The notes: generated by a model from the letters alone, not told the origin. A stretch of 64,000 nucleotides of DNA from IMGVR_UViG_3300028920_000001:1-64000; one strand, 5' to 3'; positions 5,654 to 63,169 are shown, numbered from the stretch's first letter. Translations and numbers: made by a program.

Positions 5654-7537
5654 ATGCATATTGATGAATTAAAGCAATATTTAAATTTAGAAAAGACTAA
5701 ACAAGAATTTGGTGAACCTAAAAATAATAAATCAATAGTATACGTGATTTGTGAGGATTGCCAATTAGACAGACAAATTACAATCCAGTCACTTAAGAAT
5801 AAACTTAGGTTAGATCGGGGGACTCGTTGTAATGCTTGTGGTACAAGATTTTCTTGGACAAATCCTGAAAGAAAAATTAGACAACAGCGAGTTTGGAAAG
5901 ATCCGGAGTATAGAAAGAAACAATCTAAAATTAGGAAGAAACAATGGGAAAATCCTGAGTATCAGCGCAAACAAGCTACTAAGACTGAGGCACGCAAAAA
6001 TGACTCTTCATATCAAGAAAGGATGTCTCGTCAGTCTAAAAAGCAATGGGAAAGGCCTGAATATCGAGAAAATCAGATAGAAATCCAAAAACAATTATGG
6101 AAAACTGAAGAGTATCGAAAAAATCAAAAAGCATTTAAGACTGAGGAATTTAAAAGAGGTCAATCTGTAAAACAGCAACAAGTATGGCAAGATCCTGAAT
6201 ATCGAGAAAATCAATCTGTAAAACAGCAACAAGTATGGAAAAGACCTGGATATAGGAAGCATCAATCAGCAATTCAAAGTCGAATTTGGAATAATCTAGG
6301 ATATCAGGAGCGGCAGTCAAAATTACAAAAACAGGTATGGCAGAATTTTGAATATCGGAAGCATTTTGAAGAAATTTGGGGAAGTGAAGAATATCGAGAA
6401 AAATTATCTAAATCTTTAACAGAAAAATGGAAAAATCCGGAATTTAGAAAAAGAGCTTCTGAAGCTGCAAAAGAAAGGTGGAAAGATCCGGAATTAAGAG
6501 AAAAACTTTCTATTGCAATTAAAAAGATGTGGGAAAGGTCTGAATATCGGGAAAAACAATCACGGGCTCAAAAAAGAAAATGGGAAGATCCTGAGTATCT
6601 AGAAAAAATGGTACAAGCCAGGTCTTCCCAACTCGGAAGAAGATCTTCTATTGAAAAAATTACTGAACAAATTCTTGGTTTAATTGGAGTTAATTATGAA
6701 ATAGAAGTTCCGATCGGTAAATATAGATTCGATTTTTACGTACCCGAACATGATTTATTCATAGAATGTCAGGGAGAATATTGGCATTCTATAGAAGGAA
6801 GACCTGCTCGAGATGCGGCCAAGTTCACTTATTTTGAAAAGGCTCAACCTGATTCTCAGATTTTATATCTTCATGAACGTGAGTTCTTAAATCCTGATTT
6901 AATAAGACGAAAATTGTTACTCTCCATGTTTGGGGACGGATTCAACTTTATTCAAAAAGAATTCAAATTTTCCGATCTGGCTATCCGTAAATTTGAACGG
7001 AAATCTAAAGAACCTCGTTTGTTCTTAAATTCATTTCATTATGCCCAATTCGGCAGGTCAGCTAAAGTAATTTACGGGGCTTATTTGGAGGATGAATTAG
7101 TTGCAGTCTGTAAATTTACTACTCCGGTTAGGAAAGAAGTTGCAACCTCGATGGACTATGCCTATTCAGAAGTCCTGGAATTAGATAGATTCTGTATTCA
7201 TCCGGAATATCAAAAGAAGAATCTTGCTTCTTGGTTTATCTCTCGATGTTCCAAATTAATATTTCAAGAATATCAAATTAAATGTCTGGTGTCATTTGCT
7301 GATTCAACTTATGGACATTTCGGGACGATTTATAAGGCTGCTAATTGGGAAGAGATAGGAAAGATTCGACCTGATTATCATTATGTTAATGATGATGGGT
7401 TCATCCTACATAAGAAAACCTTATATAATCATGCAGTGAAAATGGGTAAGAAAGAGAAAGAATACGCCGAAGAATTTGGATATCGAAAGGTGTTTGGTAA
7501 AGAAAAGATTAAATTTGTGAAAAAGATTCAATTGTAA
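5654..7537 (+). mobile_element. Free-standing homing-endonuclease-like gene: NUMOD3-like repeats + PD-(D/E)xK (Vsr/DUF559-like) nuclease + GNAT/Mom-like domain (Hef-like)
   Basis: More than 15 ~15-aa W..PEYR..QS repeats; RFDFY...IECQGEYWH nuclease motif; C-terminal FL..FHY, ELDRFC, LVSFAD..GH.GTIYKA.NW. Confidence 0.75.
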
Positions 7538-7764
7538 TGAATGTATTTTTCTTCATGATAACGGCTGAAGAATACCTTAAGCATTATTGTAAAGAAAATA
7601 ATATTAATTGGAATAAGCTTACTCGAGCTGAACAATTTATGTTAACTAGAAAAATTCCTTGTACTATTCGTTGTTTTAGAGTGGGTGGACCTGTCGATCT
7701 AGATGAAGATGGGACTTGTCCTGAATGTGGTGCAATTTGGTTAGCTGATGTTATGGAATCATGA
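7537..7764 (+). CDS. Small Zn-ribbon protein ending in the VMES motif
   Basis: CxxxC and CPECG; ends LADVMES*. Confidence 0.65.
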   Translation: MNVFFFMITAEEYLKHYCKENNINWNKLTRAEQFMLTRKIPCTIRCFRVGGPVDLDEDGTCPECGAIWLADVMES

Positions 7765-7976
7765 TTGTTGACATCCACAGGTGTCATCGGATTCCATGTA
7801 AAAATAAAGTAACTTATTATGTTAAAGTCACCTGGCCTTATCGATTTATGGATAATCAACGTATCATTGGAGTATGTAGCCAGCATAGATACACTGGAAT
7901 ATTTGGTGCATCTAAACATGATATTGAAGAAATTGGTAAGGAAGAAGCTTTTGTTTATGAAATCATGGAATCTTAA
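7761..7976 (+). CDS. Small Cys/His protein ending in the IMES motif
   Basis: ATGA overlap; C..C..CxxH; ends FVYEIMES*. Confidence 0.65.
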   Translation: MIVDIHRCHRIPCKNKVTYYVKVTWPYRFMDNQRIIGVCSQHRYTGIFGASKHDIEEIGKEEAFVYEIMES

Positions 7977-7977
7977 A

Positions 7978-8351
7978 TGAGACGATTTCTTTTACGACGT
8001 GATAAGGATGTAACCGGAATTTCCGGTACCGGAGTGATAGCCGAAGGTGTTATATTTGATGAAAAAGGAAAACCTGGGGAAGGAAAAGTTGTGCTTCATT
8101 GGCGCACATCAACATCTTCAATAGTTATTTATGAAAGTTTGGATGGAATAAAGAAAGTTCATTGTCATAACGAAAATACTAAAATTGTTTGGATAGATTG
8201 TTGTAAAACTTGTATTCATCTACAATGGTATGACGATAAAGGTGGTCAATGTTGGGGAACTTCATGTCCTGTGTATTATGAAGACTCATGTCCTGTGTAT
8301 CAATCTTCAATTCATCCTGAAATAATTGTGAAAACAGTGATGGAATCATAA
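7978..8351 (+). CDS. Phage hypothetical protein ending in the VMES motif
   Basis: F.L.R..DVTGISGTG.IAEGV.F..G...L.W domain common in phages, followed by a Cys-rich segment; ends IVKTVMES*. Confidence 0.7.
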
Positions 8352-8394
8352 TTTTAGGAAAGCTGTCTTTTTGTTTTTTGTCTGCAATTAACGT

Positions 8395-8469: not shown

Positions 8470-8814
8470 TTGATATCTATGTCGCACTATTTTAATTCAT
8501 TTGAGGAAATGTGGGATGCCATAATTGATTTTATTTCCCATAATCCAGATGCTGTAATTTTATGTAATGATGATCCGTCTTCAAGAAAAATTGGATATTG
8601 TGCATACGCTTACAATAAAATTAATACATATTGGACGATGGATGTTAAACCATATAATGCTTATATCTGTAAACATTTTAAATCGGATCAAGATGTCAAT
8701 CCGACTGTATTTAATATTCGTTTGATATCAGCGGCAGCACTAAATCAAGGGATAAAACTTGAAAATTTTGATCCTGAGAATTGGCACCTGTTGTCTGATA
8801 TTCATTTAACTTGA
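8470..8814 (+). CDS. Hypothetical protein
   Basis: 114-aa ORF; ends LLSDIHLT*, a degenerate version of the tail motif. Confidence 0.55.
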   Translation: MISMSHYFNSFEEMWDAIIDFISHNPDAVILCNDDPSSRKIGYCAYAYNKINTYWTMDVKPYNAYICKHFKSDQDVNPTVFNIRLISAAALNQGIKLENFDPENWHLLSDIHLT

Positions 8815-9246
8815 CATAATTTCATTAACTTGACATAATTTGCATTTAGGATGATGCCCTACAAATAAGTCGGCTACAATTTCTTTGCATTCTGGACATG
8901 GATATGAAGTGATTACAAAACCTCCACCACTGACTATGACTTCCAATTCATTCTTATTTTTAATTACCACTACTTTAGATACATCCATTTCATAGTTGAT
9001 TGATAAATCAAGAGTTCTAATTATACGATCATGGATTGTTGGAAATTCCCAGCTTTTGGGTACTATAATATCATTGTTAGGTATGGTGGAAGCTAAATTT
9101 TCTTGAAATTCAACTTGGATTTCCCCGTGTTCATACCAAATTTGCCCTTTTTGGTCTAATCTGTAACCAAATTCATCTAGCATCTTGTAAATTCTATTTA
9201 TTTCTTGATGTGATTGGGTCCAGAGATACTGCATTAGTTTATTCAT
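8806..9246 (-). CDS. Hypothetical protein with a C-terminal Zn site and IMSS tail
   Basis: Start reassigned to MNKLMQ at 9246, which removes the overlap with 9260+; CPEC..H..C..C; ends QVNEIMSS*. Confidence 0.6.
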   Translation of the reverse strand: MNKLMQYLWTQSHQEINRIYKMLDEFGYRLDQKGQIWYEHGEIQVEFQENLASTIPNNDIIVPKSWEFPTIHDRIIRTLDLSINYEMDVSKVVVIKNKNELEVIVSGGGFVITSYPCPECKEIVADLFVGHHPKCKLCQVNEIMSS

Positions 9247-9259
9247 ATTACATTTTAAT

Positions 9260-9583
9260 GTGATTTGTATCAGATGTGGGACCCATCTTTGGATATCTGA
9301 AAATCCGGTCAAATGTCCGTATTGCAAAACCTTAAATTATCCTGCTCCAAAGCCTGAATTCAAATCTCAGACTAGACCTGAATATTACCAAGCTAAACGC
9401 GAAAAATATAGCCCACAGAATCAAATTAGACGATCTCTTCCTCAACCCCCAACGGTTGGGCTCGGAGACGCTGTGGAGATGGTTACCCGAGCTATAGGGA
9501 TTAAACCTTGCGGGGGATGCAAAAAACGCAAGGAGACGTTTAACAGGGCCGTCCCTAATATACGTCGTCCTTGGAGACGTTAG
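9260..9583 (+). CDS. Zn-binding phage protein
   Basis: N-terminal CxxC..CPYC and C-terminal GLGDAV..TRAIGIKPCGGC..R motif. Confidence 0.6.
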   Translation: MICIRCGTHLWISENPVKCPYCKTLNYPAPKPEFKSQTRPEYYQAKREKYSPQNQIRRSLPQPPTVGLGDAVEMVTRAIGIKPCGGCKKRKETFNRAVPNIRRPWRR

Positions 9584-9625: not shown

Positions 9626-12187
9626 ATGGCATATAAAGATCTAGGTTCCGGAGTAAGTCAAAAACCTCAGCTCCTCAGCACCGGAGATCAATTTTCGGCT
9701 GAGCAAAAATCCTATGAATCAGTTGTAGTTCAAGAAGATGCTCCCATGATTGATTGGGAGATGAATCTACGGAGCGAAATCAAATCAGATTATGGATTAA
9801 GATTAGTTACCCAAAAGTCATACCCTTCCTGTTTTCTAACCAGTGATTTTCTCGAGAATACAGAACCATCAAATTCTTTTGAATTTTTGACTGCTAGTGT
9901 TGGTAACGAAAATAAATTTATTCTTAAAGCTTGTGACGCTATTGTGAACGGATGGCCTGTTCACATTGAATATTCTGACACTAACACTGATGGTGAAAAT
10001 GAAATTACTTTATCTGTTCCTCCGGGTGCTGGTGTTAGAACTGATTTAGTTATCCTTGAAGTATGGAGGGCCCTGGTTAAAGCAGCTCCTGATACGGCTA
10101 ATAAGAGCCCGACTAGCTTAATACTAAGAAATGGAAATGTTAAAGCTCCTGATACAGTCAATTTAACCGATGATTTAATTGATCCAACATATGCAGCAGA
10201 ATCTCAAGCTCGAGTGCAAATTCAATATCGACTTAGAGTTATTGATGGTGTTGATGCTTTTACTTATCCTGATATTTTGGATGATCCCGCTATCGTAGCT
10301 CATACTGTAAGTGATTTTTCGGGGCCTGGAGCTGACGGAAGCGCTACAGCATTTCAATTTGCAGTTGCCGATCATGATAAATCATTGTGGATAGCAGGTA
10401 CGGGCACTGTTGGTGATGCTAATGCATTGGGCACAGTGGATGGTTTTATGTATGCCATTCCGGTATGCGTAATTGCTCGTCGTAATGACGGCGCTTTTGA
10501 TCAAACACTGAATCTTAATGGTGGAAGCTTAATAGTATCGGCAAGTTCAACTCGTCCTGATGGACTATTTTCTGATCAAATTGTTGCCAGTGATGTCAAG
10601 GACTTGAGAAAAGGTTGTTCTAACAATCCTCGAGAAATTTTAGAACAAGCAACTGCTCAGCTATTCAATAATAGTTTGTCTACCGAGTTAGAAGTCGGAT
10701 TAAAAGGGACAGCTGGAACTTCTTTCTTAGAAGTTAGCAGTATTGGATTTGGTGAGAGAATCGGCAATACTGACACGGCTCGTCGTCGTTTCAGTGATCG
10801 TCCTTATTCTGAAGTTGTGGTTGGAAAGATTGTTGTAGGTGGTACACCTCAGAGTGCCTTTTACATTGATTTGAATAATTTTACTATTTCATGGGGGGCT
10901 GGAGCGACGGGAATTGATACTTTAACCCCGAATGCCACCTTAGGTCGAATTAATCAAGTTAGAGTAGTTGATACTGGAGTGCCAAGTGATGTTGATTTAA
11001 TAATTACTGGTGGAATTAGAGATATCACATATACCTCTCCTACATTAGCTGTAATTAACACTATTTCTTCCTATTCTAATGTTACTATTTACGTGGAATG
11101 TGTGATTGACTATCCGGCTGGTATCGGTGTCGATCGCAACATGTTGTCTGTCCATGATATCTGGGTTCCATCAGCTGCGACTTTAGGTGCTTGGGTTGAC
11201 AGTTCGCTTTTTGTAGTTACTCCGGATGTAACTCGATATAGCTTAATTCCAAATTCAGCTGTTCCTCCAGTCCCAATGTGGGAAGAAGATCCAGCTCATC
11301 GAGAAGTTAAGATCCAGCTTCAGTCAGTTGATCAGGTAGCTACATTTTATTCTTATAGTACTAATCAAGTATGGGTGCCTGATCGAATAAACTATGAGGA
11401 TGTAACTATTGATGATGGAATTAATCCTCCATATTCTACCGGGAATTACACTAAAGATACTGCTTATACTCAAATCTTTTTATCGATTGCAGTGCCATCT
11501 GGAACCCCGGTTCAAGTCACTTACAAAGCTTTACGGGCTTTACCTTATGTAAACAGCGCAAATCGAGTTCAGGTATTTTATCAAACTCGTGCTATTCAAT
11601 CTTTACTTCCACCGGCCGGATCTCAGACTCTTGAATTAGTTCCTCGAGCTATAGGGAATCTACATACAATTTCACATGGTTCGGGAAGTCCTGATTATCC
11701 AACCCCATTTATTCAGCCTGGAGCTCAGGTGCCTGTTGGATTATTACCTACTATTATTGAAGCTAAAATAGATGCACCGGCCGGGGATCTTAATTCTGGT
11801 TTGACTTTAAGTTTCTCTGGTATTCAAACTCATATTCCGTATTACCCAGAACCGCAATCGGTTACATTGCATCGGGAACCTGGAGATACGGTTATAGATG
11901 GTGATCAAAGAAATTTCTGGCCTCAATCCGATACTGCTGATGTGGTAGTTAAAGGTACTCCCTATATAGGGGAGAATAAACATAAGACTGTTTTACCTAC
12001 TTTAATGGAAGTGAAGTCTGATTTTCAAAGTGTGGGTAAATCTGGCACTTTCGTATTAGTGGTGTTTACTGGATACAATGAATTTGAGAAGGGAACTGAA
12101 ATTAATTTAACTAATTTAATAGGGGATTCGGCAGCAGCGGTTTATAGGGTTCGTGGGAATTTCATGAATGTGCGCAGGTCTGACTAA
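9626..12187 (+). CDS. Large virion structural protein (baseplate/tail), paralog of 12974-17623
   Basis: Shares the blocks AIVNGWP, LE.W, DDLIDP..RVQIQYR.RV, GTVDG..YAIP and RPDGLF.DQ...D..DLR with 12974-17623. Confidence 0.65.
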   Translation: MAYKDLGSGVSQKPQLLSTGDQFSAEQKSYESVVVQEDAPMIDWEMNLRSEIKSDYGLRLVTQKSYPSCFLTSDFLENTEPSNSFEFLTASVGNENKFILKACDAIVNGWPVHIEYSDTNTDGENEITLSVPPGAGVRTDLVILEVWRALVKAAPDTANKSPTSLILRNGNVKAPDTVNLTDDLIDPTYAAESQARVQIQYRLRVIDGVDAFTYPDILDDPAIVAHTVSDFSGPGADGSATAFQFAVADHDKSLWIAGTGTVGDANALGTVDGFMYAIPVCVIARRNDGAFDQTLNLNGGSLIVSASSTRPDGLFSDQIVASDVKDLRKGCSNNPREILEQATAQLFNNSLSTELEVGLKGTAGTSFLEVSSIGFGERIGNTDTARRRFSDRPYSEVVVGKIVVGGTPQSAFYIDLNNFTISWGAGATGIDTLTPNATLGRINQVRVVDTGVPSDVDLIITGGIRDITYTSPTLAVINTISSYSNVTIYVECVIDYPAGIGVDRNMLSVHDIWVPSAATLGAWVDSSLFVVTPDVTRYSLIPNSAVPPVPMWEEDPAHREVKIQLQSVDQVATFYSYSTNQVWVPDRINYEDVTIDDGINPPYSTGNYTKDTAYTQIFLSIAVPSGTPVQVTYKALRALPYVNSANRVQVFYQTRAIQSLLPPAGSQTLELVPRAIGNLHTISHGSGSPDYPTPFIQPGAQVPVGLLPTIIEAKIDAPAGDLNSGLTLSFSGIQTHIPYYPEPQSVTLHREPGDTVIDGDQRNFWPQSDTADVVVKGTPYIGENKHKTVLPTLMEVKSDFQSVGKSGTFVLVVFTGYNEFEKGTEINLTNLIGDSAAAVYRVRGNFMNVRRSD

Positions 12188-12828
12188 TGAATAGTTATAT
12201 CGTAAGGCAGCTTGATCATAAGGTAATTGGATTTAGTTCCAAGCCGCTGAACTATTCGGTGTCTGGATTGTATATCGTAGATATAGATTCAGCAATCCAT
12301 CCTCTTCCTGATTTAACCGGAAATTCAGTATCCGACTTATTGACTGCTAAGGAGGATGCTTATAAAGCATTAACTGGTCTTACTTCTACTTATTTGTCGG
12401 AAGAGCATACTTCTACAAAAGTTGAACAAAGTCTATCATCTAAATATATATCTGGATTTCCAAAAAAGACGGAATTGCTTGGATTAGGTTCGATTGTTAC
12501 CAGTAGTTTTGCTTTAGGCGGGATAGCTACTAAATTATACTGTCATTGGAAACCGGCCACATATGATATTGCTCAGGGTTCAGCTTTTGATCCGTCCTGG
12601 ACTCGATATAATTGGGATGCAGGGTCATCATCGTATATAAATTATGATCCTAGTTTATTTACGGTCGAGCTTAGGGATTTAGCCAACAGTGTTACTATTT
12701 TCACTTTTACTGCAGATACTCTTCATTCAGGATTGAGTGTTCCGAATGCATCATATAGATTAAGATTTACCAATACTGCTGCTGCTAGGTATACTTTATC
12801 GGATTGGTATTTACTCTGGGACGTCTAA
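12187..12828 (+). CDS. Hypothetical virion structural protein
   Basis: Translationally coupled and located between the large structural genes. Confidence 0.55.
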   Translation: MNSYIVRQLDHKVIGFSSKPLNYSVSGLYIVDIDSAIHPLPDLTGNSVSDLLTAKEDAYKALTGLTSTYLSEEHTSTKVEQSLSSKYISGFPKKTELLGLGSIVTSSFALGGIATKLYCHWKPATYDIAQGSAFDPSWTRYNWDAGSSSYINYDPSLFTVELRDLANSVTIFTFTADTLHSGLSVPNASYRLRFTNTAAARYTLSDWYLLWDV

Positions 12829-12973
12829 TTTATTGGTATTATTTATTATATTGCAATGCTATTCAGACGGCACAAAGATCTGAACACCATAGGCTACTTA
12901 TATAGTGGGAAACTGGGTTTTCAAGCATTCATTGAACAGGATCCAGTAAACATCGTGACGGAGTCTGCCTAAC

Positions 12974-17623: not shown

Positions 17624-17630
17624 TAAAACC

Positions 17631-21905: not shown

Positions 21906-21947
21906 TTTCTGGAAGTTTATTGGGGTAGATCCAGGTAGGATAAGACT

Positions 21948-31686: not shown

Positions 31687-31693
31687 ATTCTTC

Positions 31694-32569
31694 ATGGTAA
31701 TGAACTTATTATATTTAATTTTAAATATGAGGAGGCTTTCGAAAGTCGAAATAGCTAAAATGACAGACCTATACCGTAATGGACAATCAATTAATAAAAT
31801 ATCAAATTCTTTTTCTATCGACAGATCTACGATTAGATATTGGTTGTCTAAGTACAGTTTATTAAGACCAAAGACTAAATTGAAATTAGATGCTTCTTAT
31901 TTTGAAAATTTAAATAATAAAAATAAATGTTATTGGATCGGTTTTTTATTAGCTGATGGCACAATTGGGTATAGGTATCTTGATACTAAAAATGGGAAAG
32001 TACGAAGACCAAAGCGGGTGAATCTCACTCTTCAATCTAAAGATGAATCACACTTAAAATTATTTAAAGATGAAATTAACTTTGATGGTTCAATCAAACA
32101 ATTGACAAGATTTGATAAGAGATACGGTAAAACACGGCATCACTCTAGTCTTACCATTGTTTCAGTTCCATTTTGTAATTGTTTATTAGCTAAAGGATGG
32201 GATGAATTCAAGAAAGATGGTGATATATCTATTTTAGAACGAATTCCTAGTCATTTGTTGCTTTTTACTATGAGAGGGCTGTTCGATGGAGATGGTGGTT
32301 CCATTGTAGATAAACGAAATCAAATCATGGTTTATTTTACAAATAAACACCTTTCAGTAGTTCGGTTTTTCCAGAATTGGTTGACTCAAAAGTGTGGCCT
32401 TAATAAGACAAATATTTTCCAGAATTCCAAGTCTAAATTGTGTCGTCTTCAATATAGAGGTAATACTCAAGGAACTTCAATTTTGACATATTTGTATTCG
32501 GGGGGAGGACCAATGTTAAGAAGAAAAGATGCTCGACTTGTCTTGGATGTAGATTTTTCTGACATCTAA
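31694..32569 (+). mobile_element. LAGLIDADG homing endonuclease with N-terminal HTH
   Basis: YWIGFLLADGTI and MRGLFDGDGG motifs; likely start at MRRLSK. Confidence 0.85.
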
Positions 32570-33426
32570 TGCCGGAATGTACTAAATGTTCCGATTTAGG
32601 AGTGATTGATCGGGACGGAAAACTATACGAATGTGATTGTGCATTTGTACGTAGATTATCTAATACTCTTCCTCTCTATATTAAGCAAGCCCATTATCAA
32701 AAAGAACATTTACAGCTCGGTATGCTAAAACATACTGATAAATCGATTTATATTAAATCTACTTGGCAGGATATGAAAGCAATTGTGAAAGCTTTGTTTT
32801 TCATGTATCCACGGAAGTTTATTCGGATTACTTCAGATGCTGAAATTCGTGATGTTTACGTAGGATCAAAATCGCGGGCTGCTCGATCTGAAGACTTTGA
32901 CGGGGAAGTATATAATAATTTGGCTGATTTAGTTACTGGACCTGAGTTGTTAATTGTTCGACTTGGGGAGATCAAAAATAAAAATAAAGCTGCTCCTGGA
33001 GCATTGCTTGAATCACTTAAATATCGGATTGATTATGGACGTCCAGTATGGATTTGGACTGATTTGGAATGCCCTTTTAACTTAGGTAGTTTTGCTTATT
33101 CCGAACCTGTGGCCGAGATTTTAGCTACAGGTTGTACTTCCATTGAGGTCCCTCGAATCGCCCCTGATTCTAATTATGAATCTTACTTTGATATCGAGAC
33201 TACTTCTTCCGGGTCCTCTTCCGGGTCCTCTCGTCCTCTAATTGATTCTAACGGGGAGGAGGACCCTGCTGCTGCCCAAACTCAGAAGAAGATAAAGAAA
33301 AAGGCAAAGAAGACCTATGTAGAACCAGTTGAAAATAATGAAATTGAGCTAGATTCTAGTCCATCCAATTCGTTGTCCGGATATGGTGGTGGAGTTGGAA
33401 AATCCAAAAAATTTGGGCAACGATGA
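32569..33426 (+). CDS. DnaC/IstB-like helicase loader with degenerate ATPase motifs
   Basis: N-terminal CxxC..G..CxC; ELLIVRLGE sits at the Walker B position; R.....PVWIWT; directly upstream of DnaB. Confidence 0.5.
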   Translation: MPECTKCSDLGVIDRDGKLYECDCAFVRRLSNTLPLYIKQAHYQKEHLQLGMLKHTDKSIYIKSTWQDMKAIVKALFFMYPRKFIRITSDAEIRDVYVGSKSRAARSEDFDGEVYNNLADLVTGPELLIVRLGEIKNKNKAAPGALLESLKYRIDYGRPVWIWTDLECPFNLGSFAYSEPVAEILATGCTSIEVPRIAPDSNYESYFDIETTSSGSSSGSSRPLIDSNGEEDPAAAQTQKKIKKKAKKTYVEPVENNEIELDSSPSNSLSGYGGGVGKSKKFGQR

Positions 33427-34952: not shown

Positions 34953-35234
34953 ATGCGTTTTGCACATATGAAAACTAAAGATGGTACTCTGGTAGTCGTA
35001 TCCGTATCTAAAGACAAACTTTATATTACTATTTCACCTGAATTAGGAATGCATACTGGGATCACCTTAGATCCAAATGCAATTAAATGGAATACAATGT
35101 GGTTTATTAAAATTATCCGTGGTTTTATTGAAGTTGGAAATATTAAATGTGATATTTTCGATGTAGCTAAAACAGTTTTGACTTTAGCGAAGAAACAGCA
35201 TTACGATGTGTTGTTACCAGTGATGTGTAGTTAA
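34953..35234 (+). CDS. Hypothetical protein with VMCS tail
   Basis: 93-aa ORF; ends VLLPVMCS*. Confidence 0.55.
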   Translation: MRFAHMKTKDGTLVVVSVSKDKLYITISPELGMHTGITLDPNAIKWNTMWFIKIIRGFIEVGNIKCDIFDVAKTVLTLAKKQHYDVLLPVMCS

Positions 35235-35641
35235 GTCTCCATAACGTCTGAAACTAAGGCAGTTTTAAGAGTGTCGATTATTTTAAGTGAATTTTTAGAT
35301 ATGGTTTCCATTAGTGCTTCCTGTATATCATAATCGTTTTTTATTATTTCAGACAATTGCCAATGAATATTATAATCTTTTTCAAATAAAATAAGGAATA
35401 GACTAAGGAATTTTTCCATATTAACAGGTTTTAATTCATAGCCTTTTCCTTTACACTCTCTGCATTTCACATCATCTAATGAGACTGTCTGATCTAATGT
35501 TCTATAACTTTCGTTGTGTCCTTTTCCATAACAAAAATTGCAGGGGATTGTTATCATCAGTCCAATTTTATCGAAATCTTCGCCAGAACCATAACCTAAT
35601 AGAATATCTTTAATTTCTCTGCGAAGATTTTCATCCATCAT
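35231..35641 (-). CDS. Protein with a DnaJ-type CxxCxGxG zinc finger and VMET tail
   Basis: CNFCYGKG and CRECKGKG; ends LVSDVMET*. Confidence 0.65.
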   Translation of the reverse strand: MMDENLRREIKDILLGYGSGEDFDKIGLMITIPCNFCYGKGHNESYRTLDQTVSLDDVKCRECKGKGYELKPVNMEKFLSLFLILFEKDYNIHWQLSEIIKNDYDIQEALMETISKNSLKIIDTLKTALVSDVMET

Positions 35642-54717: not shown

Positions 54718-55443
54718 TTATTTTTGCATAATACTTTCGACAATCTCGGTATTTTCTAGCCATTGCGCAATATCAGGATGAATTTGATCTTTGTTAGGTA
54801 ACTTAATATTGCCCTTAGGAATTTTGCTAAATTGGAAAAATCGATTATTTTCCCTAAATATCATGGCAGTTTTCTTAGTAATTTTTGCACCTAATAAGGA
54901 TTGAACTTTTCGCCTTCGTTTTAGGAATACTTGTTTTTCATTGTCGGTAAGATCATCAGGTTGAATAAATCCATTCCTGAGTTCCATGAATCTAGCAGTA
55001 AATTTAGCCACACAGTAGGCGTCTGCTTCATCAGATTGCATGGGATCAGGATTCATTTGATCTAATTGCACAAACCGTTGAATATCTTGTTTATCAGCGG
55101 ATCCTTTACCAGTCAAGAATTTCACTGTGGCTGGATCAAACAAGACACAATCTTTGCGTTTTTCGAAAATAGCCTCGAGAGAAAACATCATTAGGCCAAA
55201 ATGGCGCTCAGAATATTCCCCACCACCATAGGCTGGACTTTCCAGTCCAACCAAATCTACTCTGTGCCGTCGAAGTAAATCAGCAACTAATGAACGAAAA
55301 TGAATATAACGAGCTACTGGGACTACCGATTTTAATGTTCCCTCATGTCCAGAAGCAATTAGTTTTCTCTTGCCTTTTAATGTAGAATCATAAATAGCCC
55401 ATCCATAGGATAACAAACTCGGATCTAAACCCAAAGCCTTCAT
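54718..55443 (-). CDS. ruvC: Holliday junction resolvase (RuvC family)
   Basis: LGLDPS...GWA, VGLE, P.TVK..TGKG.ADK and DEADA motifs; ends IVESIMQK*. Confidence 0.85.
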   Translation of the reverse strand: MKALGLDPSLLSYGWAIYDSTLKGKRKLIASGHEGTLKSVVPVARYIHFRSLVADLLRRHRVDLVGLESPAYGGGEYSERHFGLMMFSLEAIFEKRKDCVLFDPATVKFLTGKGSADKQDIQRFVQLDQMNPDPMQSDEADAYCVAKFTARFMELRNGFIQPDDLTDNEKQVFLKRRRKVQSLLGAKITKKTAMIFRENNRFFQFSKIPKGNIKLPNKDQIHPDIAQWLENTEIVESIMQK

Positions 55444-57231
55444 ATGATACTCCATTTAGAACCTGATGATGTATATAAATCATTCATTTATACCGGTGCT
55501 CCGATTAAAATAGGTGAATTTAGCGCTAAGAAATTACCATTTAAGTGTAAATGTGGGTCAATAAAATTAATAAGAATGAATACCATTACTACTGGGAAAA
55601 GTACAACTTGTGGGGAATGTAGTAAAATTAACTTAAATTACGGTACTAAATTCAACGATCTTATTTACATCGGGCCTTCAATTCGAATCCATCCTCAAAG
55701 TGAAAAAAAATTATTATTTAAATGTAAATGTGGTAAATCTAAGTATATTAGGTTCTTTACAGTAGAGAAAGGTAAAGCCAAGAAATGCGGGGACTGCAAT
55801 TTAACTGTTATTAAAAAGGGCGACAAAATAGGTAATTTTTGGTATGCTGGAAATGAAATTACTGAATATCTAGGAACAATTAAAAAATATCCATTTAAAT
55901 GCAAATGTGGGAAGATAGTGTTTCTTAGTCTAAGAAACACTAAGAAAAATCAAACATGTGGTAAGTGTAATGAAATATTATTGAAACACATGGAAAAATA
56001 TCAAACTTTTGTTTATTTAGGTAAAGATATTCATATCGGACCTTGGTCTAAAACAAAATTGCCATTTAAATGTAGATGTGGGGCATTAAAGTATATTTCC
56101 ATCTCATCTATTACATGTGGAGATACTGTATCATGTACTAATTGCTATCAAATAATTAGTACATGGTATAAAAATAATGTACCAACACTTAAAAAATTAA
56201 AATGTCCAATCTCCCCTAGTCAATTTCCGATAGGTGGCCCAATTCCATTAGAAACAATTAAATTTCGTTCTAAGAGTTATACCTTTCTTTGTCCTATTTG
56301 TGATAGTCAATATAATCCAACTTTAAATGAAATTGTAAGAGGAAAGCGATTAACATGTGGCTGCATATGCAATAAAATTTCAGTTCCTAATAGAGAAATA
56401 AAAAACTTTATAGATTCATTAAATTTGAATTCTGAATTGGAATTCAAATTAGACGGCAGATATTTTGACATTAAATCAGGTAACTTGTTGATTGAATTGA
56501 ATGGAATCCGTTGGCATTCCAAAATAAATTCAAGACAACGTGATACTGAAAAATATTCAATAGCTATGGACAATGACTACCAATTATTGTCCATATTTGA
56601 AGATGAATGGAAAAACAAAAAACAGATATTTAAAAACATTATACAACATAATCTTGTACGCAGTGAGTCCATACTCTTACGACCTCAAAAGTGTGAAATT
56701 TTAAAAGTTCAAAATAAAGAAATCAACGACTTTTACGAAAGAACTCATTATATTGGTAAATGTAAAGCTAAAGTTCACTATGCTGTTATTCATGATTCTA
56801 AAATTATAGCTGCCATGTCTTTTGGTAAGCCAACTCGGCCTACCAAAAGATACGATTGGGAAATAATACGAATAGCAACAGATCCAAATTACCATGTTCA
56901 TGGAATCTGGTCTAAACTCTTGAAATTGTTTATTAAAGAATATAAACCAAAGTCCATTGTGTCTTTTTCAGATAATCGTTTGTTTACTGGAAAAGTGTAT
57001 GAAAAATTGGGTTTCACTTATGATGGAGATGTGAAACCTGATTACTACTGGACGTTAGGAAATAAGAGATTCCATAAATCTAATCTCAGGAAAACTAAAG
57101 AAGAAAAATTAACTGGTTTAACTGAAACTCAGTTAAGAGAAGCCCAGGGATATAAGAAAATTTGGGATTTAGGGAAAAAGAGATGGGTCTATCAATTGAT
57201 AGACCCATCTAATTCCAAAGCCCGCACTTAG
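55444..57231 (+). mobile_element. Hef-like homing endonuclease: Zn-ribbon repeats + PD-(D/E)xK nuclease + GNAT/Mom-like domain
   Basis: Four F.CKCG...CG.C repeats; FDI...IELNGIRWHS...IFEDEW; FYERTHY.G, EIIR.A, SKL, IVSFSDNR..G.VY..LGF, PDY.W, IWDLG. Confidence 0.8.
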
Positions 57232-59414: not shown

Positions 59415-59813
59415 TCAACTGTTCATCACTTTATGGACTGTATAATTCTTTTTAAGATTAGTAATCGTATTATGTTCATGAACGATCCAAACGATACCTA
59501 ACCAGCCCCAACACATTAAACAAAGATAAAAGGGTTTGCCTATATAATTATTTATATAAGATTCCATAATTGATGAATCTAATCTGATATAGATACTAAC
59601 ATAAATTAAGATAGCTACACCGAAATAAATTGAGCTAATAATACTCCAAGTCCAAATATTAGTGAAAAACACGGTTGTAAAAGATACGGTAAATGGAATT
59701 GCCATCCATGCGGTATAACAACTAAATTCAGCTTTGGCTACTTTAATTTCATACTGAGATTTAATTTTCTCAATATCTGTTTGATTTGGTTTAACCAGAC
59801 CTGAACTACTCAT
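59415..59813 (-). CDS. Three-TM membrane protein with VMNS tail
   Basis: Hydrophobic helices; ends TVHKVMNS*; architecture similar to 60022-60561. Confidence 0.65.
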   Translation of the reverse strand: MSSSGLVKPNQTDIEKIKSQYEIKVAKAEFSCYTAWMAIPFTVSFTTVFFTNIWTWSIISSIYFGVAILIYVSIYIRLDSSIMESYINNYIGKPFYLCLMCWGWLGIVWIVHEHNTITNLKKNYTVHKVMNS

Positions 59814-59814: not shown

Positions 59815-60021
59815 TCAGTCTTCCATAATCATAGTAACAAATGCTTCTTTTAAATAAATTTTATATAATTTGGGTGAATCTGCTTCTCGACACCAAGGGC
59901 AAATTTCATCCAACGGAATAAGATCACCATCCAAAGCACACGGTTTACCACAACGTTGACATCCAATTACTCCACTAGCAATGGAAATTGGTCTGGCATG
60001 TTGAGGATCATAATGTAACAT
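59815..60021 (-). CDS. Small Zn-ribbon protein with IMED tail
   Basis: CQRC...CPWC; ends FVTMIMED*. Confidence 0.65.
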   Translation of the reverse strand: MLHYDPQHARPISIASGVIGCQRCGKPCALDGDLIPLDEICPWCREADSPKLYKIYLKEAFVTMIMED

Positions 60022-60561
60022 TCAAGATTCCATGATTTCAGCTACAAATGACTCTTTTTTCAGTCTAGAAATTCTATGGTGCAATATTATGAGCCAAGGA
60101 AATGATACTAACCAAGCAACACAGGCTAACATGATGAACGTGTATTCTGGGAGTTTTTTAATGATTGCAATTTTAGATCGGAAAGATTGATTTATTCTAG
60201 TAATTCGAAAGATAAATGAAAAACTCCACGCTATTCCTATTACACAAATAATTGGCGTTATCCAAAGACTGGGGTTTGTTTTTACCATAAAGAAATGATT
60301 GATGATTGGAGTTGCCATTGATCCTACGGTAGCTGCGACAGGAGTCATCCACATTCGAGAAAATGATCTATAAATCCGTTGAAATTTTAAATCTTCCAAC
60401 ATCTGTGCTGGAAAAGAACGGTTAAGAATCTGAACCAAATTTTGCATTTGATTCGTAAATTCAGTACATGATACTCCCATACTTTTAAGTGCCTTATTAT
60501 ATTGCTTCGTTAAGAGTTTTTGATTTTTTAGATAGTCTTGAATGATTTTTTCTTGGTTCAT
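60022..60561 (-). CDS. Membrane protein with IMES tail
   Basis: About three TM helices; ends FVAEIMES*. Confidence 0.65.
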   Translation of the reverse strand: MNQEKIIQDYLKNQKLLTKQYNKALKSMGVSCTEFTNQMQNLVQILNRSFPAQMLEDLKFQRIYRSFSRMWMTPVAATVGSMATPIINHFFMVKTNPSLWITPIICVIGIAWSFSFIFRITRINQSFRSKIAIIKKLPEYTFIMLACVAWLVSFPWLIILHHRISRLKKESFVAEIMES

Positions 60562-61007: not shown

Positions 61008-61015
61008 AGATTAGA

Positions 61016-61201
61016 TTACATTTCCATGATGAAATTAACGATATATGTTTGCCAGTATTCAATGGCTTCTGGAATGGAAAAAGCAGGAGGGCCTTCATGA
61101 TAGCATTCTTCATTAAGACATCCGACGAGAAAGAAGTGCCTTCGATGCCAGACATCACATTTTTGCCCACAGATAGGACAAGGTCCTAAATTTGTTTTCA
61201 T
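61016..61201 (-). CDS. Small Lar-like Zn-ribbon protein with IMEM tail
   Basis: L.PCPICG...V.C...C...EAIEYW pattern as in restriction-alleviation Lar-like proteins; ends IVNFIMEM*. Confidence 0.55.
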   Translation of the reverse strand: MKTNLGPCPICGQKCDVWHRRHFFLVGCLNEECYHEGPPAFSIPEAIEYWQTYIVNFIMEM

Positions 61202-61725
61202 GACACCATAACGCTAGTTACTATTCGTTCTTTTCGATTAGCTCTTCTCACTTTTAGATTCCATAATTTTTTGGATTGAGGATGACATGTACATTTTGTG
61301 ACTACAAAGAAATTATCTTCACCAGGGCCGATGGCAATGATTTTACCAATTTCTACTGGCTTATTATGGATATGAATAAATAACTCTTTATGTTTTTTAA
61401 TGATACTAACTAAAATAATTGTCCAAATTGCAGTTAATCCAATTCTTAAATATAGACTGCCTGGCTCAGAAGGAAAAACATAAGGCACCCATTTAGCAAA
61501 ACTCGGTGGTGCCCATCTATAAGTAGCAAGATAAATATAAAGCAAAATCCAAAATCGTGACCACCAAATCTTACGACTCAGAGGTCGTTTTTTCTCCCAT
61601 TCTAATGTTTTATCAAGTGACCAAAATAATGGTTTGAAGATAATACCTAGTACTTTAAACAGAAGTTTCAGGAAACCCATATCTAAAAGACGTGTTAAGA
61701 TAGGGTCTCGTTTGCTAACATTCAT
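61198..61725 (-). CDS. Membrane protein with VMVS tail
   Basis: TM helices; ends IVTSVMVS*. Confidence 0.6.
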   Translation of the reverse strand: MNVSKRDPILTRLLDMGFLKLLFKVLGIIFKPLFWSLDKTLEWEKKRPLSRKIWWSRFWILLYIYLATYRWAPPSFAKWVPYVFPSEPGSLYLRIGLTAIWTIILVSIIKKHKELFIHIHNKPVEIGKIIAIGPGEDNFFVVTKCTCHPQSKKLWNLKVRRANRKERIVTSVMVS

Positions 61726-62765
61726 CGTTCATTTTGGCAAATTAGAAAGTCGCCGCCACAATGATCATAGCAACTTTGCCAAATTTCACTGGGCATTTCA
61801 TGCTTATCTTGACAGATTTTTCGACACTTCCATAATTTATCCTGGCAGGTAGGTTCCCAAGGAACTTGGTCCATATCCCAAGCTAATCCGACTTCCCAAA
61901 TTTCATTTACAGGGCGATATTGGCTAACAAATCGTTCTTTTCTTCCATCAGTATACCAAACTGCCAGAATCCCTTTTTCTCCGTCTTTTCCTCGTTGAAT
62001 GCGTGTTTTGTGGTCTGTTCGCCATTTATTGGTTTTGCGGAATTTCTTTTTATACGGCTCGGTACCATTGCTGATCCAACGAGTTTTCTTAATTGGTTTC
62101 TTGATTTGAACGTTTCGACTATACAAAACCACACGTAACTTACTTAAATCTTCAGTGACTTCATAAGTTTCGGCATGTAAATAAACTGAAGCTGGATATG
62201 GATTCTTAAAAACTAAATCAAGTTCAGGATAACTAACAGTTGCATCAAACCCTCGTTTGATATAAGTCGATGGTCTCGAATGAGAAGTTCGCTGCACAAT
62301 TTCCATTCCTGACATTAATGCTGCAGCATGGATTGTAGAACTTACCTGACAAGTTCCACCACCGTATTCTTCTTTAAATTCACCGAGATAAATTATGATA
62401 GAAGTCATATACCCGAATTCTTCTGTTCGGGGACCTACTGTTTTATTATAAGAAAATGAATCACCAGGATGAATTGGGATCCATTCTAAATTTGCTACAT
62501 TAGTCTTAATATTATGAGCTCGATTTTCATATCGGGAGGTTTTATATTTACCTACATGCTGGTAAATAGTTTCATATTCTCCCACCACATGATACTTATC
62601 ATATGATTCTGGTGATTTTATTTCAGGAAAAGTAATTTCCGGCCATTTCTGAAGAACTAATAGCTGTGGCTGTGGCTGTGGCTGTGGTTCAGTTTTACAA
62701 GCTGGGATTAGATAAGAGATCGTAATTCCGATAAAGACTGAGGTGAGAATTCTGATCAAATTCAT
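61722..62765 (-). CDS. VanW-domain exported protein or lipoprotein
   Basis: NR..NI, PG..FSYN..VGPRT...GY, GGG.CQVSST, R..HS...YI..G.DATV....DL.F.N motifs; N-terminal hydrophobic signal ending PAC. Confidence 0.85.
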   Translation of the reverse strand: MNLIRILTSVFIGITISYLIPACKTEPQPQPQPQLLVLQKWPEITFPEIKSPESYDKYHVVGEYETIYQHVGKYKTSRYENRAHNIKTNVANLEWIPIHPGDSFSYNKTVGPRTEEFGYMTSIIIYLGEFKEEYGGGTCQVSSTIHAAALMSGMEIVQRTSHSRPSTYIKRGFDATVSYPELDLVFKNPYPASVYLHAETYEVTEDLSKLRVVLYSRNVQIKKPIKKTRWISNGTEPYKKKFRKTNKWRTDHKTRIQRGKDGEKGILAVWYTDGRKERFVSQYRPVNEIWEVGLAWDMDQVPWEPTCQDKLWKCRKICQDKHEMPSEIWQSCYDHCGGDFLICQNER

Positions 62766-63169
62766 TAGCTCTCCATCACTTCAGCTATTCCAGCTAAAAG
62801 AACTAAATTGTCGATTTGGCTCTTATACTGAAAAATGTACACATAGGCGCTTCGGCTACCTTGTTGACCCGTCTCAACAGCAACAAACCAAAATCGGCTA
62901 CAAGTAAGATGCTTATCCTTAATGTCTGCAATTACACCTTCAAAGTTACCTTTTTTAAGCATATTTTTAACTGAGACAACACCATTCTTTTCCCAATCTG
63001 TTGAACCGGCAAAGAAATAGTAAATACAATTAAGTTCAAGAGTTTCTGTGGATAGTTTCCAACGATCTGGCTCCCAATACCGACAAAAATTCCAGGGCAC
63101 TTGATTATAAAATCGCTGCTGAGGGACTTTCTTTTTCCGTTTAGGAGCAGGATTCCAGGGCCAGTTCAT
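62765..63169 (-). CDS. Hypothetical protein with VMES tail
   Basis: Ends GIAEVMES*. Confidence 0.6.
   Translation of the reverse strand: MNWPWNPAPKRKKKVPQQRFYNQVPWNFCRYWEPDRWKLSTETLELNCIYYFFAGSTDWEKNGVVSVKNMLKKGNFEGVIADIKDKHLTCSRFWFVAVETGQQGSRSAYVYIFQYKSQIDNLVLLAGIAEVMES

What the first reader, a model, noticed from the sequence alone, without database searches (positions are those of the whole stretch)
7537..63169. A shared C-terminal tag (consensus VxxIMES-stop) on about 13 mostly unrelated phage proteins
Seen in the sequence: the last seven residues are LADVMES (7537), VYEIMES (7761), VKTVMES (7978), VNEIMSS (8806), LLPVMCS (34953), VSDVMET (35231), VHKVMNS (59415), VTMIMED (59815), VAEIMES (60022), VNFIMEM (61016), VTSVMVS (61198), IAEVMES (62765) and, more weakly, VESIMQK (RuvC). 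LSDIHLT (8470) is a degenerate case. All 13 have V/I/L at -7, V/I at -4 and M at -3, in exact register with the stop codon. The carriers include Zn-ribbons, a DnaJ-type Zn finger, multi-TM proteins and soluble unknowns on both strands and at distant loci. No structural protein and no core enzyme except possibly RuvC has it. Codons differ (GAA-TCA, GAA-TCT, GAG-AGC, GAG-ACT), so conservation is at the protein level rather than a DNA repeat. Inference: a short amphipathic C-terminal helix read by one receptor. It could be a degron or adaptor site for a AAA+ or tail-specific protease, a TPR/PDZ-type docking peptide, or an address for co-localising or packaging accessory effectors. I know of no described phage system of this kind.
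Basis: partly seen in the sequence, partly recalled or inferred. Interest (0 to 1): 0.93.

Follow-up and report, generated by a model that had tools for sequence, protein, structure and literature searches.

The report
Shared C-terminal tag across huge-phage proteins
About a quarter to a third of the genes of this uncultured 427-kb phage, nearly all small proteins of unknown function and otherwise unrelated, end in the same peptide (V-x-x-I/V-M-E-S-stop), which looks like a proteome-wide address or docking tag of a kind not described for phages.

Summary
All 13 tails are at the stated ORF ends (13 of 73 genes; expected 0.01; P about 1e-36). The window is the first 64 kb of a 427-kb uncultured phage contig. 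In about half of that genome I count roughly 110 carriers. About 40% of proteins of 80-200 aa have the tail, and almost no enzyme or structural protein does.

The motif is always flush with the stop codon: 69 matches at offset 0, against 2 at offsets 1-15. Selection acts on the amino acids. All four Val codons are used, and Ser uses both TCN and AGY. The same tail occurs in relatives with 39-63% GC.

With the tail removed, 93 carriers fall into 91 BLAST clusters. Homologs of one carrier domain outside the lineage lack the tail. The full motif is a ~14-residue capped amphipathic helix. Position -3 is M (rarely H or Q) in this lineage and V/I in a sister lineage ([KE]TxxVV[DE][GS]). A second tail, KKIITK, exists in the same genome.

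Best reading: a portable C-terminal docking signal read by one receptor, probably phage-encoded. Neither the receptor nor the fate of tagged proteins is identified. I found no known system that matches it.

The parts
7537..7764 (+). 75-aa Cys-rich carrier; tail LADVMES encoded at 7741-7764
   Evidence: no Pfam/PHROG hit; the stop overlaps the next start (ATGA)
7761..7976 (+). 71-aa carrier; tail VYEIMES at 7953-7976 (extended form KEEAFVYEIMES)
7977..8351 (+). 124-aa carrier: PF26761/phrog_7499 domain, a Cys-rich extension, then tail VKTVMES at 8328-8351
   Evidence: Homologs outside the lineage (74-110 aa) end just after the domain and lack both the extension and the tail.
8470..8814 (+). 114-aa protein ending LSDIHLT (8791-8814): the H-for-M variant of the tail
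   Evidence: A paralog in L065 ends LLCNVHLT. [VI]H[ED]S ends recur in this phage and its relatives.
8806..9327 (-). 173-aa carrier with two CxxC knuckles; tail VNEIMSS at 8806-8829
34953..35234 (+). 93-aa carrier; tail LLPVMCS at 35211-35234; convergent with the next gene, stops overlapping by 4 nt
   Evidence: The syntenic small genes after DnaB in L004 and L005 also carry tails.
35231..35641 (-). 136-aa carrier with a DnaJ-type CxxCxGxG Zn finger (weak match); tail VSDVMET at 35231-35254
54718..55455 (-). 245-aa RuvC-like resolvase with a ~90-aa C-terminal extension ending VESIMQK (54718-54741)
   Evidence: It is the only window carrier of 200 aa or more. Orthologs in L013/L014 lack a tail.
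59415..59813 (-). 132-aa membrane carrier; tail VHKVMNS at 59415-59438
59815..60021 (-). 68-aa Zn-ribbon-like carrier; tail VTMIMED at 59815-59838
60022..60561 (-). 179-aa multi-TM carrier; tail VAEIMES at 60022-60045, after a basic stretch that follows the last TM segment
61016..61201 (-). 61-aa Zn-ribbon-like carrier; tail VNFIMEM at 61016-61039
61198..61725 (-). 175-aa membrane carrier; tail VTSVMVS at 61198-61221
62765..63169 (-). 134-aa soluble carrier; tail IAEVMES at 62765-62788. It lies between a VanW-domain gene (61722-62765) and a RuvB-like AAA+ gene (63169 onward).

Best explanation
The tail is a portable, lineage-specific C-terminal signal. It is a short amphipathic helix: optional N-cap [ST]xxE, then phi-V-x-x-[VI]-M-[ED]-S-COOH. 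It must end exactly at the free C-terminus. One receptor reads it on the cytoplasmic side, and because the tag drifts between lineages that receptor is probably phage-encoded.

The tail has been attached to, or kept on, more than 100 otherwise unrelated small accessory proteins, soluble, Zn-binding and membrane-anchored. It works as a common docking or address tag that each carrier needs in order to function. I favour recruitment to a shared hub or effector over a pure destruction signal.

Shown: the motif, its exact register, amino-acid-level selection, portability, clade-wide conservation and lineage variants.
Inferred: that a single receptor exists, that it is phage-encoded, and what happens to the tagged proteins.
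For: 1. Extreme enrichment only at the terminus, with absolute register.
2. Amino-acid-level selection across genomes of 35-63% GC.
3. Portability. 93 tail-trimmed carriers form 91 BLAST clusters. PF26761 homologs outside the lineage lack the tail. One array-family member that acquired a TM segment after its internal tail-like stretch carries a fresh tail at its new C-terminus (L084:12908-13333).
4. Position -3 is restricted to M (103), H (6) or Q (3), never L, I, V or F. That fits a specific pocket better than generic hydrophobic packing.
5. Lineage variants suggest tag and receptor co-evolve: [KE]Txx[VIL][VI][ED][GS] in L013/L014, possibly V..VQ[ED]x in L170, and a second tail, KKIITK, in the same genome.
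6. In 8 of 11 TM carriers the flank after the last TM segment is the more basic, which puts the tail in the cytoplasm.
7. The tail is kept on every member of hyper-divergent tandem arrays. That is the pattern expected when losing the tail means losing function.
Against: - No receptor was found in about half of the genome. The carriers themselves have almost no Pfam or PHROG matches.
- In the one confidently modelled family the tail helix is predicted with high pLDDT as part of a compact 77-aa domain. In that family it could be an intramolecular element. I could not inspect the contacts.
- The second model was too poor to say anything (pLDDT 49).
- The TM-topology test is weak (8:2:1).
- A tag on about 25-30% of genes has no precedent in phages, so the priors are uncertain.
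Confidence: 0.55

Rival explanations
1. C-terminal degron. The tail marks a whole class of accessory (probably early) proteins for timed removal by a protease or unfoldase that reads the free C-terminus, either host-encoded or phage-encoded.
For: - Exact register with the carboxylate, as in ssrA-type tags.
- Carriers are heterogeneous and include membrane proteins with cytoplasmic tails.
- Enzymes and structural proteins lack the tail.
- The phage invests in proteolysis-linked machinery: its own tmRNA lies inside a carrier array, and it has an M16 peptidase.
- Class B, KKIITK, loosely recalls basic ClpX signals of the MuA type (my own knowledge, not tested).
Against: - The tail ends in acidic plus small residues (E-S, D-G). 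By my own knowledge this resembles the non-degradable LDD variant of ssrA rather than known ClpX, ClpA, Tsp or FtsH signals.
- The phage's own tmRNA tag ends in the canonical LAIAA, so the tail is not that signal.
- Host proteases are conserved, yet the tag drifts between lineages.
- Purifying selection that keeps a destruction tag on more than 100 separate genes is harder to explain than selection for a tag each protein needs.
- No Clp, Lon or FtsH homolog was seen in about half of the genome.
Confidence: 0.17
2. Capsid-targeting signal. The tail docks small proteins to the scaffold, portal or inner capsid surface so that they are packaged and co-injected, as a C-terminal analogue of the T4 capsid targeting sequence or of encapsulin cargo-loading peptides.
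For: - Carriers are small: 41% of 80-200 aa proteins have the tail against 1 of 67 proteins of 200 aa or more in 163 kb.
- Hypervariable bodies with a constant delivery signal is the architecture of effector repertoires.
- A resolvase (RuvC) carries the tail. By my own knowledge T4 endonuclease VII associates with the portal.
- One carrier sits next to the head-protease gene.
Against: - More than 100 distinct cargo species is far beyond any known virion proteome.
- About 14% of carriers have TM segments.
- Carriers are scattered through replication and nucleotide-metabolism regions, not the head module.
- No scaffold or MCP link was found.
Confidence: 0.1
3. No common receptor. The tail is the conserved last helix of one enormously expanded and diverged paralogous superfamily, or a generic stabilising cap or anti-degron for small proteins. 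It would then be inherited by descent and by in-array recombination.
For: - Tandem arrays of 10-20 small genes all carry it.
- An HMM detects paralogy within the L039 array.
- AlphaFold2 places the helix within a compact domain with high confidence.
- S or G at the last position is a typical helix C-cap (my own knowledge).
Against: - The tail sits on clearly different architectures: multi-TM proteins, 50-aa single-TM peptides, CxxC knuckles, a PF26761 domain whose other homologs lack it, and RuvC.
- The M/H/Q-only position and the invariant register are stricter than core-packing constraints.
- Bodies have diverged beyond BLAST detection while the tail stays nearly invariant.
Confidence: 0.12
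4. Nascent-chain signal. The last 7-10 residues act inside the ribosomal tunnel at the stop codon, pausing termination, modulating it or coupling it to rescue. This would be a gene-class-specific translational control.
For: - Absolute register with the stop codon.
- The phage carries much translation machinery: EF-Tu, tmRNA, a UCA-anticodon tRNA, many tRNAs and an L7/L12-like protein.
Against: - All three stop codons follow the tail in roughly genomic proportions: TAA 31, TGA 27, TAG 8.
- Downstream context varies: overlaps, intergenic regions and convergent ends.
- The ribosome is conserved but the tag drifts between lineages.
- The N-capped amphipathic 14-mer and its position directly after Zn knuckles point to a folded helix in the mature protein.
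Confidence: 0.05
5. A DNA- or RNA-level element at gene ends (an RBS or start for the next gene, a promoter or terminator, or an attC-like cassette junction) that only looks like a peptide motif.
For: - 30% of carriers end in an ATGA overlap with the next gene, which favours TCA at -1.
- Arrays of small ORFs resemble cassette arrays.
Against: - Wobble positions are free and Ser uses both codon families.
- The amino-acid motif persists from 35 to 63% GC.
- Nothing downstream is conserved.
- It occurs at convergent ends and before long intergenic gaps.
- Most genes lack a Shine-Dalgarno motif.
- The -3 codon in the sister lineage is GTT, ATT or CTC, so it is not a start codon.
Confidence: 0.01

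Closest known systems
Peroxisomal PTS1 (SKL-COOH read by the Pex5 TPR domain); also KDEL/KKXX retrieval tails
   Same: A very short signal in exact register with the free C-terminus. It is carried by many unrelated proteins and read by one receptor. It varies by lineage around a consensus.
   Different: PTS1 is eukaryotic. The sequence is different. No TPR protein or compartment is known here. This tag is longer (7-14 residues, helical) and also sits on membrane proteins.
ssrA/tmRNA tag and other ClpX C-terminal recognition signals; the SspB C-terminal ClpX-tethering peptide
   Same: C-terminal peptides read together with the alpha-carboxylate by a cytoplasmic AAA+ machine. They can be bipartite, with an adaptor part and a pore part.
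   Different: The last residues here are acidic plus small, not nonpolar. The phage's own tmRNA tag ends in LAIAA and is unlike the tail. No Clp homolog was found.
Encapsulin cargo-loading peptides and the T4 capsid targeting sequence
   Same: A short portable peptide that addresses diverse small proteins to the interior of an HK97-fold shell.
   Different: The T4 sequence is N-terminal and cleaved. Encapsulin peptides have a G-S-L type consensus and their cargo genes sit beside the shell gene. Here there are more than 100 carriers, scattered across the genome, and some have TM segments.
Constant C-terminal module on expanded viral or parasite families (poxvirus ankyrin-PRANC/F-box proteins; Giardia VSPs ending CRGKA)
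   Same: Tandemly expanded, fast-diverging bodies joined to an invariant extreme C-terminal element that couples them to one cellular machine.
   Different: Those bodies are homologous repeat families. PRANC is a ~40-aa domain that binds Skp1. Here the bodies are unrelated and the element is a 7-14 residue helix.
Hub-binding C-terminal peptides of replisome proteins (clamp-binding motifs, SSB tail)
   Same: Short C-terminal peptides shared by unrelated proteins that all dock to one hub.
   Different: The consensus is different (QL[SD]LF, DDDIPF). Replisome proteins of this clade carry another tail, (I/L)DLSD(I/L), instead. TM and ORFan carriers do not fit a replisome hub.

Membership tests
ssrA-like ClpX/ClpA/Tsp C-degron | Nonpolar last 2-3 residues (LAA, VAA or similar) at the free C-terminus | tested here: not met
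   Position -2 is E or D in 42 of 66 carriers and -1 is S in 44 of 66. The phage tmRNA tag ANDNASLAIAA shows the canonical form in the same genome.
ssrA-like ClpX/ClpA/Tsp C-degron | The tag shortens the protein's half-life in a protease-dependent way | not testable with these tools
   Needs reporter stability assays.
PDZ-domain C-terminal ligand | Hydrophobic residue at the very last position; a PDZ protein as partner | tested here: not met
   The last residue is S, T, G, A or C in most carriers. No PDZ domain appears in the Pfam results for about 208 kb.
TPR carboxylate-clamp ligand (EEVD, PTS1) | EEVD or SKL-type terminal sequence and a TPR receptor | tested here: not met
   The terminal sequence is [VI]M[ED]S. 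No TPR hit was found in the sampled half of the genome (same calls). The other half was not sampled.
Encapsulin cargo-loading peptide | G-S-L type consensus near the C-terminus; cargo gene adjacent to the HK97-fold shell gene | tested here: not met
   The consensus is different. Only 1 of about 110 carriers lies in the head module.
T4-type capsid targeting sequence | N-terminal ~10-aa peptide removed by the prohead protease at L/I-x-E | tested here: not met
   The tag is C-terminal. No shared N-terminal motif exists among carriers. Position -2 is not strictly acidic.
T4-type capsid targeting sequence | Tagged proteins are present in the virion | not testable with these tools
   The phage is uncultured and no virion proteome is available.
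Sliding-clamp-binding motif | QL[SD]LF or QxxLxxFF type peptide on replication and repair proteins | tested here: not met
   The tail has no Q and no aromatic pair. DNA pol, helicases and UvsX lack it.
Integron attC or other DNA junction repeat | Conserved nucleotide core and an imperfect inverted repeat at cassette 3' ends, independent of reading frame | tested here: not met
   Wobble positions are free, two Ser codon families are used, and there is no downstream conservation.
Shine-Dalgarno or start signal of the downstream gene | A purine-rich anti-SD complement 5-10 nt before a start codon, present only where a gene follows | tested here: not met
   Tails occur at convergent ends and before intergenic gaps. 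Most genes lack an SD motif.
Ribosomal arrest or termination-modulating peptide | The nascent peptide stalls the ribosome at the stop codon | not testable with these tools
   Indirect evidence only: there is no stop-codon preference and the motif drifts between lineages.

The most novel reading that the evidence does not exclude
A clade of huge phages uses a proteome-wide C-terminal 'zip code'. More than 100 unrelated small proteins per genome (about a quarter to a third of all genes) carry a 7-14 residue helix ending M-E-S-COOH, which a co-evolving phage receptor reads at the free C-terminus. There are at least two tag classes in one genome and different tag dialects in sister lineages. In the most interesting version, the hypervariable bodies are target binders and the constant tail plugs them into one effector machine (a protease, modifier or translocase). 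That would be a modular, F-box-like host-takeover system, or a sorting system for a phage-built compartment.
Probability: 0.45. Interest if true: 0.93.

Novelty: categorically new. Interest (0 to 1): 0.88.

Why it matters
Hundreds of small ORFan genes are the main dark matter of huge phage genomes. A single shared tag means many of them feed into one pathway, so finding one receptor could give a functional handle on about 30% of the genes in such a genome at once.

It would also be the first linear sorting or recruitment signal known to operate across a phage proteome. That could be a bacterial-virus counterpart of PTS1, NLS or F-box logic. It would provide a portable peptide tool and a simple sequence marker for classifying accessory genes in this clade. 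The lineage-specific dialects (VMES, VHES, VVDG, KKIITK) offer a natural experiment in tag-receptor co-evolution.

Tried and rejected
- RBS or start-codon explanation. Most genes have no SD motif. The -3 codon in the sister lineage is not a start codon. Tails occur at convergent ends.
- DNA repeat or cassette junction. Rejected by codon diversity.
- Stop-codon or readthrough link. A UCA-anticodon tRNA exists, but stop usage after tails and readthrough extension lengths look like those of other genes.
- The phage tmRNA tag as a template for the tail. It is ANDNASLAIAA, unrelated.
- The three giant ORFs (12974-26342) as a scaffold with repeated docking sites. They are G/S/T-rich paralogs that look like tail fibres.
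- AAA+ candidates. The gene beside the carriers (63169 onward) is a bona fide RuvB. The 369-aa AAA+ near 187 kb is MoxR-like: Walker A and B motifs, no GYVG pore loop, only a weak match to ClpA D2. It is conserved like a core gene in relatives.
- Phyletic search for a gene restricted to the tag lineage in the 23-kb DNA-pol neighbourhoods. None found.
- Pfam and PHROGs on 40 carriers, including the largest (up to 365 aa). Essentially nothing.
- Fold search of the array-family model against the PDB. No match.
- A second AlphaFold2 model (window 7977-8351) had pLDDT 49 and is uninformative.
- LR745208 (485 kb, DNA pol 32% identical) has no such tail.
- Five full-text literature searches found no description of such a tag. 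One candidate preprint concerns sortase signals only.
- One database profile search for the array family found only this phage's own proteins.

Full report
**What is there**

With a simple longest-ORF gene set, 13 of 73 genes in the window match [VIL]xx[VI]Mxx at the C-terminus. The same pattern occurs only 3 times in 20,123 internal heptamer windows. That gives 0.011 expected at termini (P about 1.5e-36). In 2000 residue shuffles the count never exceeded 1. None of 210 out-of-frame shadow ORFs and no N-terminus matches.

The conserved positions use all synonymous codons. Val at -7 is GTA 15, GTT 13, GTC 9, GTG 7. Ile/Val at -4 uses ten different codons. Ser at -1 uses both TCN and AGY. Nothing downstream of the stop is conserved.

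**Where the window comes from, and the scale of the feature**

The window is bases 1-64000 of IMGVR_UViG_3300028920_000001, a 426,960-bp uncultured phage contig. It has no near relative among cultured phages. An almost identical 428,825-bp ENA contig gave access to further stretches with gene calls.

- In the unbiased first 81 kb, 32 of 114 genes have an aliphatic pair at -4/-3, against 6.4 expected. About 25 of these are of the VMES type.
- In 163 kb, 84 of 288 ORFs carry the tail. By size: 29% of 40-80 aa ORFs, 41% of 80-200 aa ORFs, and 1 of 67 ORFs of 200 aa or more.
- Further loci add 13 of 39, 6 of 35 and 14 of 52, and include carriers of up to 365 aa.
- Allowing for overlaps, I count roughly 110 carriers in about 208 kb, half of the genome.
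- The motif is flush with the stop in 69 cases. It lies 1-15 residues from the end in 2 cases. The other 22 matches are at the background rate.

Two scans of all 2.9 million IMG/VR contigs used AT-rich back-translations of the tail. They returned 65 and 82 sites. The focal genome accounts for 8 and 5 of them, and a 436-kb relative for 6 and 13. A 393-kb relative adds 2, and contigs of the same phage from a second sample add 3. The rest are singletons or one non-coding site replicated in a family of ~40-kb phages.

**Anatomy of the tag**

The logo from 66 carriers:
- -7: V 44, I 12, L 6
- -5: E 22
- -4: I 38, V 25
- -3: M
- -2: E 34, D 8
- -1: S 44

Upstream there is often [IV][ST]xx[ED][AL] or a Cys knuckle placed so that the last Cys is at about -9. 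Hydrophobic residues at -8/-7/-4/-3 (and -11, -14), acidic residues on the opposite face, an [ST]xxE N-cap and a small C-cap together describe a C-terminal amphipathic helix of 2-4 turns.

AlphaFold2 on a seven-member array family gave a confident model (pLDDT 89.6). It has a beta-beta-beta-alpha-alpha-alpha-beta core followed by helix 66-76, which is the tail. The fold has no PDB match.

**Who carries it**

- With the last 12 residues removed, 93 carriers fall into 91 BLAST clusters.
- 13 of the 93 have TM segments and 10 have two or more CxxC motifs.
- 40 carriers scanned against Pfam and PHROGs gave almost nothing: weak RuvC and DnaJ Zn-finger hits, and phrog_7499/PF26761.
- For the PF26761 protein (7977-8351), the twelve homologs outside the lineage are 74-156 aa. 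They stop a few residues after the domain. Only an 83%-identical relative keeps the Cys-rich extension and the tail.
- One array member has a TM segment inserted after a decayed internal tail, and carries a new tail at its new end.

Proteins without the tail:
- DNA pol, DnaB, SF2 helicase, UvsX, the SbcC-like protein, RuvB, dCMP deaminase, the sigma factor, EF-Tu, RtcB, ligase and Pol X.
- The giant fibre-like ORFs.
- The head module: TerL, portal, head protease and MCP.

In 8 of 11 TM carriers the flank after the last TM segment is the more basic, which puts the tail in the cytoplasm. This is suggestive only.

**Relatives**

Genomes whose DNA pol, UvsX or AAA+ protein is 54-60% identical, with 39-63% GC, show the same tail. 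Examples are CQDPECMVLYVMES, HSCKELRILEVMES and EAAKFNLVSEIMES. The 436-kb relative has runs of about 20 consecutive small genes ending [IV]VxxVMES.

Two contigs reached through UvsX (L013, L014) have a different dialect, [KE]Txx[VIL][VI][ED][GS]-COOH. In L014, 6 of 38 genes have the core form, against 0.07 expected. L170, from the same contig as L007, has two ends of the form V..VQ[ED]x. Three relatives showed no tail in 23 kb around their DNA pol. A more distant 485-kb phage has none.

The focal genome also has a second, basic tail, (P)KKIITK-COOH, on 8 small and otherwise dissimilar proteins.

**Explanations excluded or weakened**

- A DNA- or RNA-level element is excluded by the codon data. 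The motif also survives a 28-point GC range and occurs at convergent gene ends.
- SD signals are rare in this genome.
- Stop-codon identity and readthrough length do not differ from other genes.
- A nascent-chain effect at termination would explain the register. It fits poorly with a tag that drifts while the ribosome stays conserved, and with the capped amphipathic helix.
- A purely structural cap inherited within one superfamily fits the arrays and the AlphaFold2 model. It does not fit the variety of architectures, the M/H/Q-only position or the absolute register.

**Most likely mechanism**

I read the tail as a portable docking or address signal whose free end is recognised by one cytoplasmic receptor. 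The lineage dialects argue that this receptor evolves quickly, so it is more likely phage-encoded than a conserved host machine. This is inference.

The tail is kept on every member of arrays whose bodies have diverged beyond recognition. I therefore think carriers need it to work (recruitment to a hub or effector, or sorting), rather than it being only a destruction tag.

A degron is the main alternative. Against it, the terminal residues are acidic plus small, unlike the known bacterial C-degrons I am aware of, and unlike the phage's own tmRNA tag (LAIAA). Capsid targeting is possible for soluble carriers. It is hard to reconcile with more than 100 species, with the TM carriers, and with the scattered genomic locations.

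**The receptor search failed**

In about half of the genome there is no TPR, PDZ, Clp, Lon or FtsH homolog. The only candidates are:
- an M16 peptidase;
- a MoxR-like AAA+ without a pore loop, which is conserved across relatives like a core gene;
- the head protease.

No gene restricted to the tag lineage was found in the DNA-pol neighbourhoods.

**Novelty**

Five full-text searches found no report of such a tag. Every membership test for known C-terminal signals that I could run failed on a defining feature. The concept of a C-terminal signal is familiar (PTS1, ssrA, cargo-loading peptides). A tag shared by a quarter to a third of a phage's genes, with dialects and a second class, has no described counterpart. 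I rate it categorically new, with the caveat that its function is not established.

Noticed in passing
L016:3769-8535 (contig about 72.8-77.5 kb, just beyond the window); also L086:11156-11410 and L087:12923-13270: A second shared C-terminal tail, (P)KKIITK-COOH, on 8 small (42-115 aa) proteins that are otherwise dissimilar. They are interleaved with VMES-type carriers. One protein ends KKVMES, which looks like a hybrid of the two.
   Followed up: partly
L014:2066-5632 and 12615-13624; L013:1214-1651, 4218-4502, 15018-15431: A sister lineage uses a different tail dialect, [KE]Txx[VIL][VI][ED][GS]-COOH (for example AQVVDS, AEVVDG, TSIVEG). In L014, 6 of 38 genes have the core form.
   Followed up: partly
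L016:5174-5527 and L016:744-818 (contig about 76 and 80.5 kb); L013:16904-16978: The phage encodes a tmRNA (Rfam 106 bits; tag ANDNASLAIAA) inside a carrier array. It also encodes a 75-nt tRNA with anticodon UCA, which would read UGA. A relative has a tRNA with anticodon CUA. Long ORFs are intact under code 11, so there is no sign of genome-wide recoding.
   Followed up: partly
L087 (contig 107-128 kb), L032, L167:5463-5861: Translation-related cargo: an EF-Tu homolog (392-399 aa), RtcB, a cluster of 11 tRNA genes and a protein with an L7/L12 C-terminal domain.
   Followed up: no
window 9626-26342: Four large ORFs (853, 1549, 1424 and 1464 aa) with no Pfam hit. They are G/S/T/I-rich. The 1424- and 1464-aa proteins are 35% identical over their full length. 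The 853- and 1549-aa proteins share an N-terminal ~320 aa. They look like tail-fibre or receptor-binding paralogs.
   Followed up: partly
window 29593-33426; relatives L003-L009: The helicase ends LIVDLSGI. The following LAGLIDADG endonuclease ORF (31694-32569) ends in a copy-like LVLDVDFSDI. Helicases of relatives end (I/L)DLSD(I/L). This is a separate conserved C-terminal motif on a replisome protein, apparently duplicated by a homing-endonuclease insertion.
   Followed up: no
L015 (LR745208.1, 266703-309891): In a distant 485-kb phage, four replication-region proteins end in LDLF, LDMFA, GDLFT or LGMF-type tails. These look like clamp-binding peptides. There is no VMES-type tail.
   Followed up: no
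window 5654-7537 and 55444-57231; 1374-2788: Two paralogous Mom-like/HNH-family proteins (627 and 595 aa) and two adjacent MobA-like nucleotidyltransferase paralogs. They may be a DNA-modification module.
   Followed up: no
window, upstream of most genes: Shine-Dalgarno motifs are rare upstream of start codons. Stop usage is TAA 35, TGA 27, TAG 10. This suggests a host that initiates translation largely without SD pairing.
   Followed up: no
window 7584-7919 (-): A 111-aa ORF on the opposite strand overlaps the carriers at 7537-7764 and 7761-7976. A longest-ORF caller picks it, but it is almost certainly a shadow ORF.
   Followed up: yes
L085 (23.6-kb contig of the same phage; overlaps L034/L038): Head module: TerL (648 aa), portal (607 aa), a head maturation protease with a ~270-aa C-terminal extension (535 aa) and an MCP (297 aa). 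A single 169-aa carrier is transcribed divergently from the protease gene.
   Followed up: partly
L165:2-922 (-) (contig about 150 kb); L167:1059-2168 (-) (contig about 187 kb): An M16-family (insulinase/processing-peptidase type) metallopeptidase and a MoxR-like AAA+ ATPase. These are the only protease- or chaperone-like genes seen apart from the head protease. The AAA+ is 54-56% identical in three related huge phages.
   Followed up: partly
L084:14163-14360 (-): One member of the tandem array family stops at ...RVISLEEA, exactly where the last eight tail residues would begin. It may be a decaying copy.
   Followed up: no
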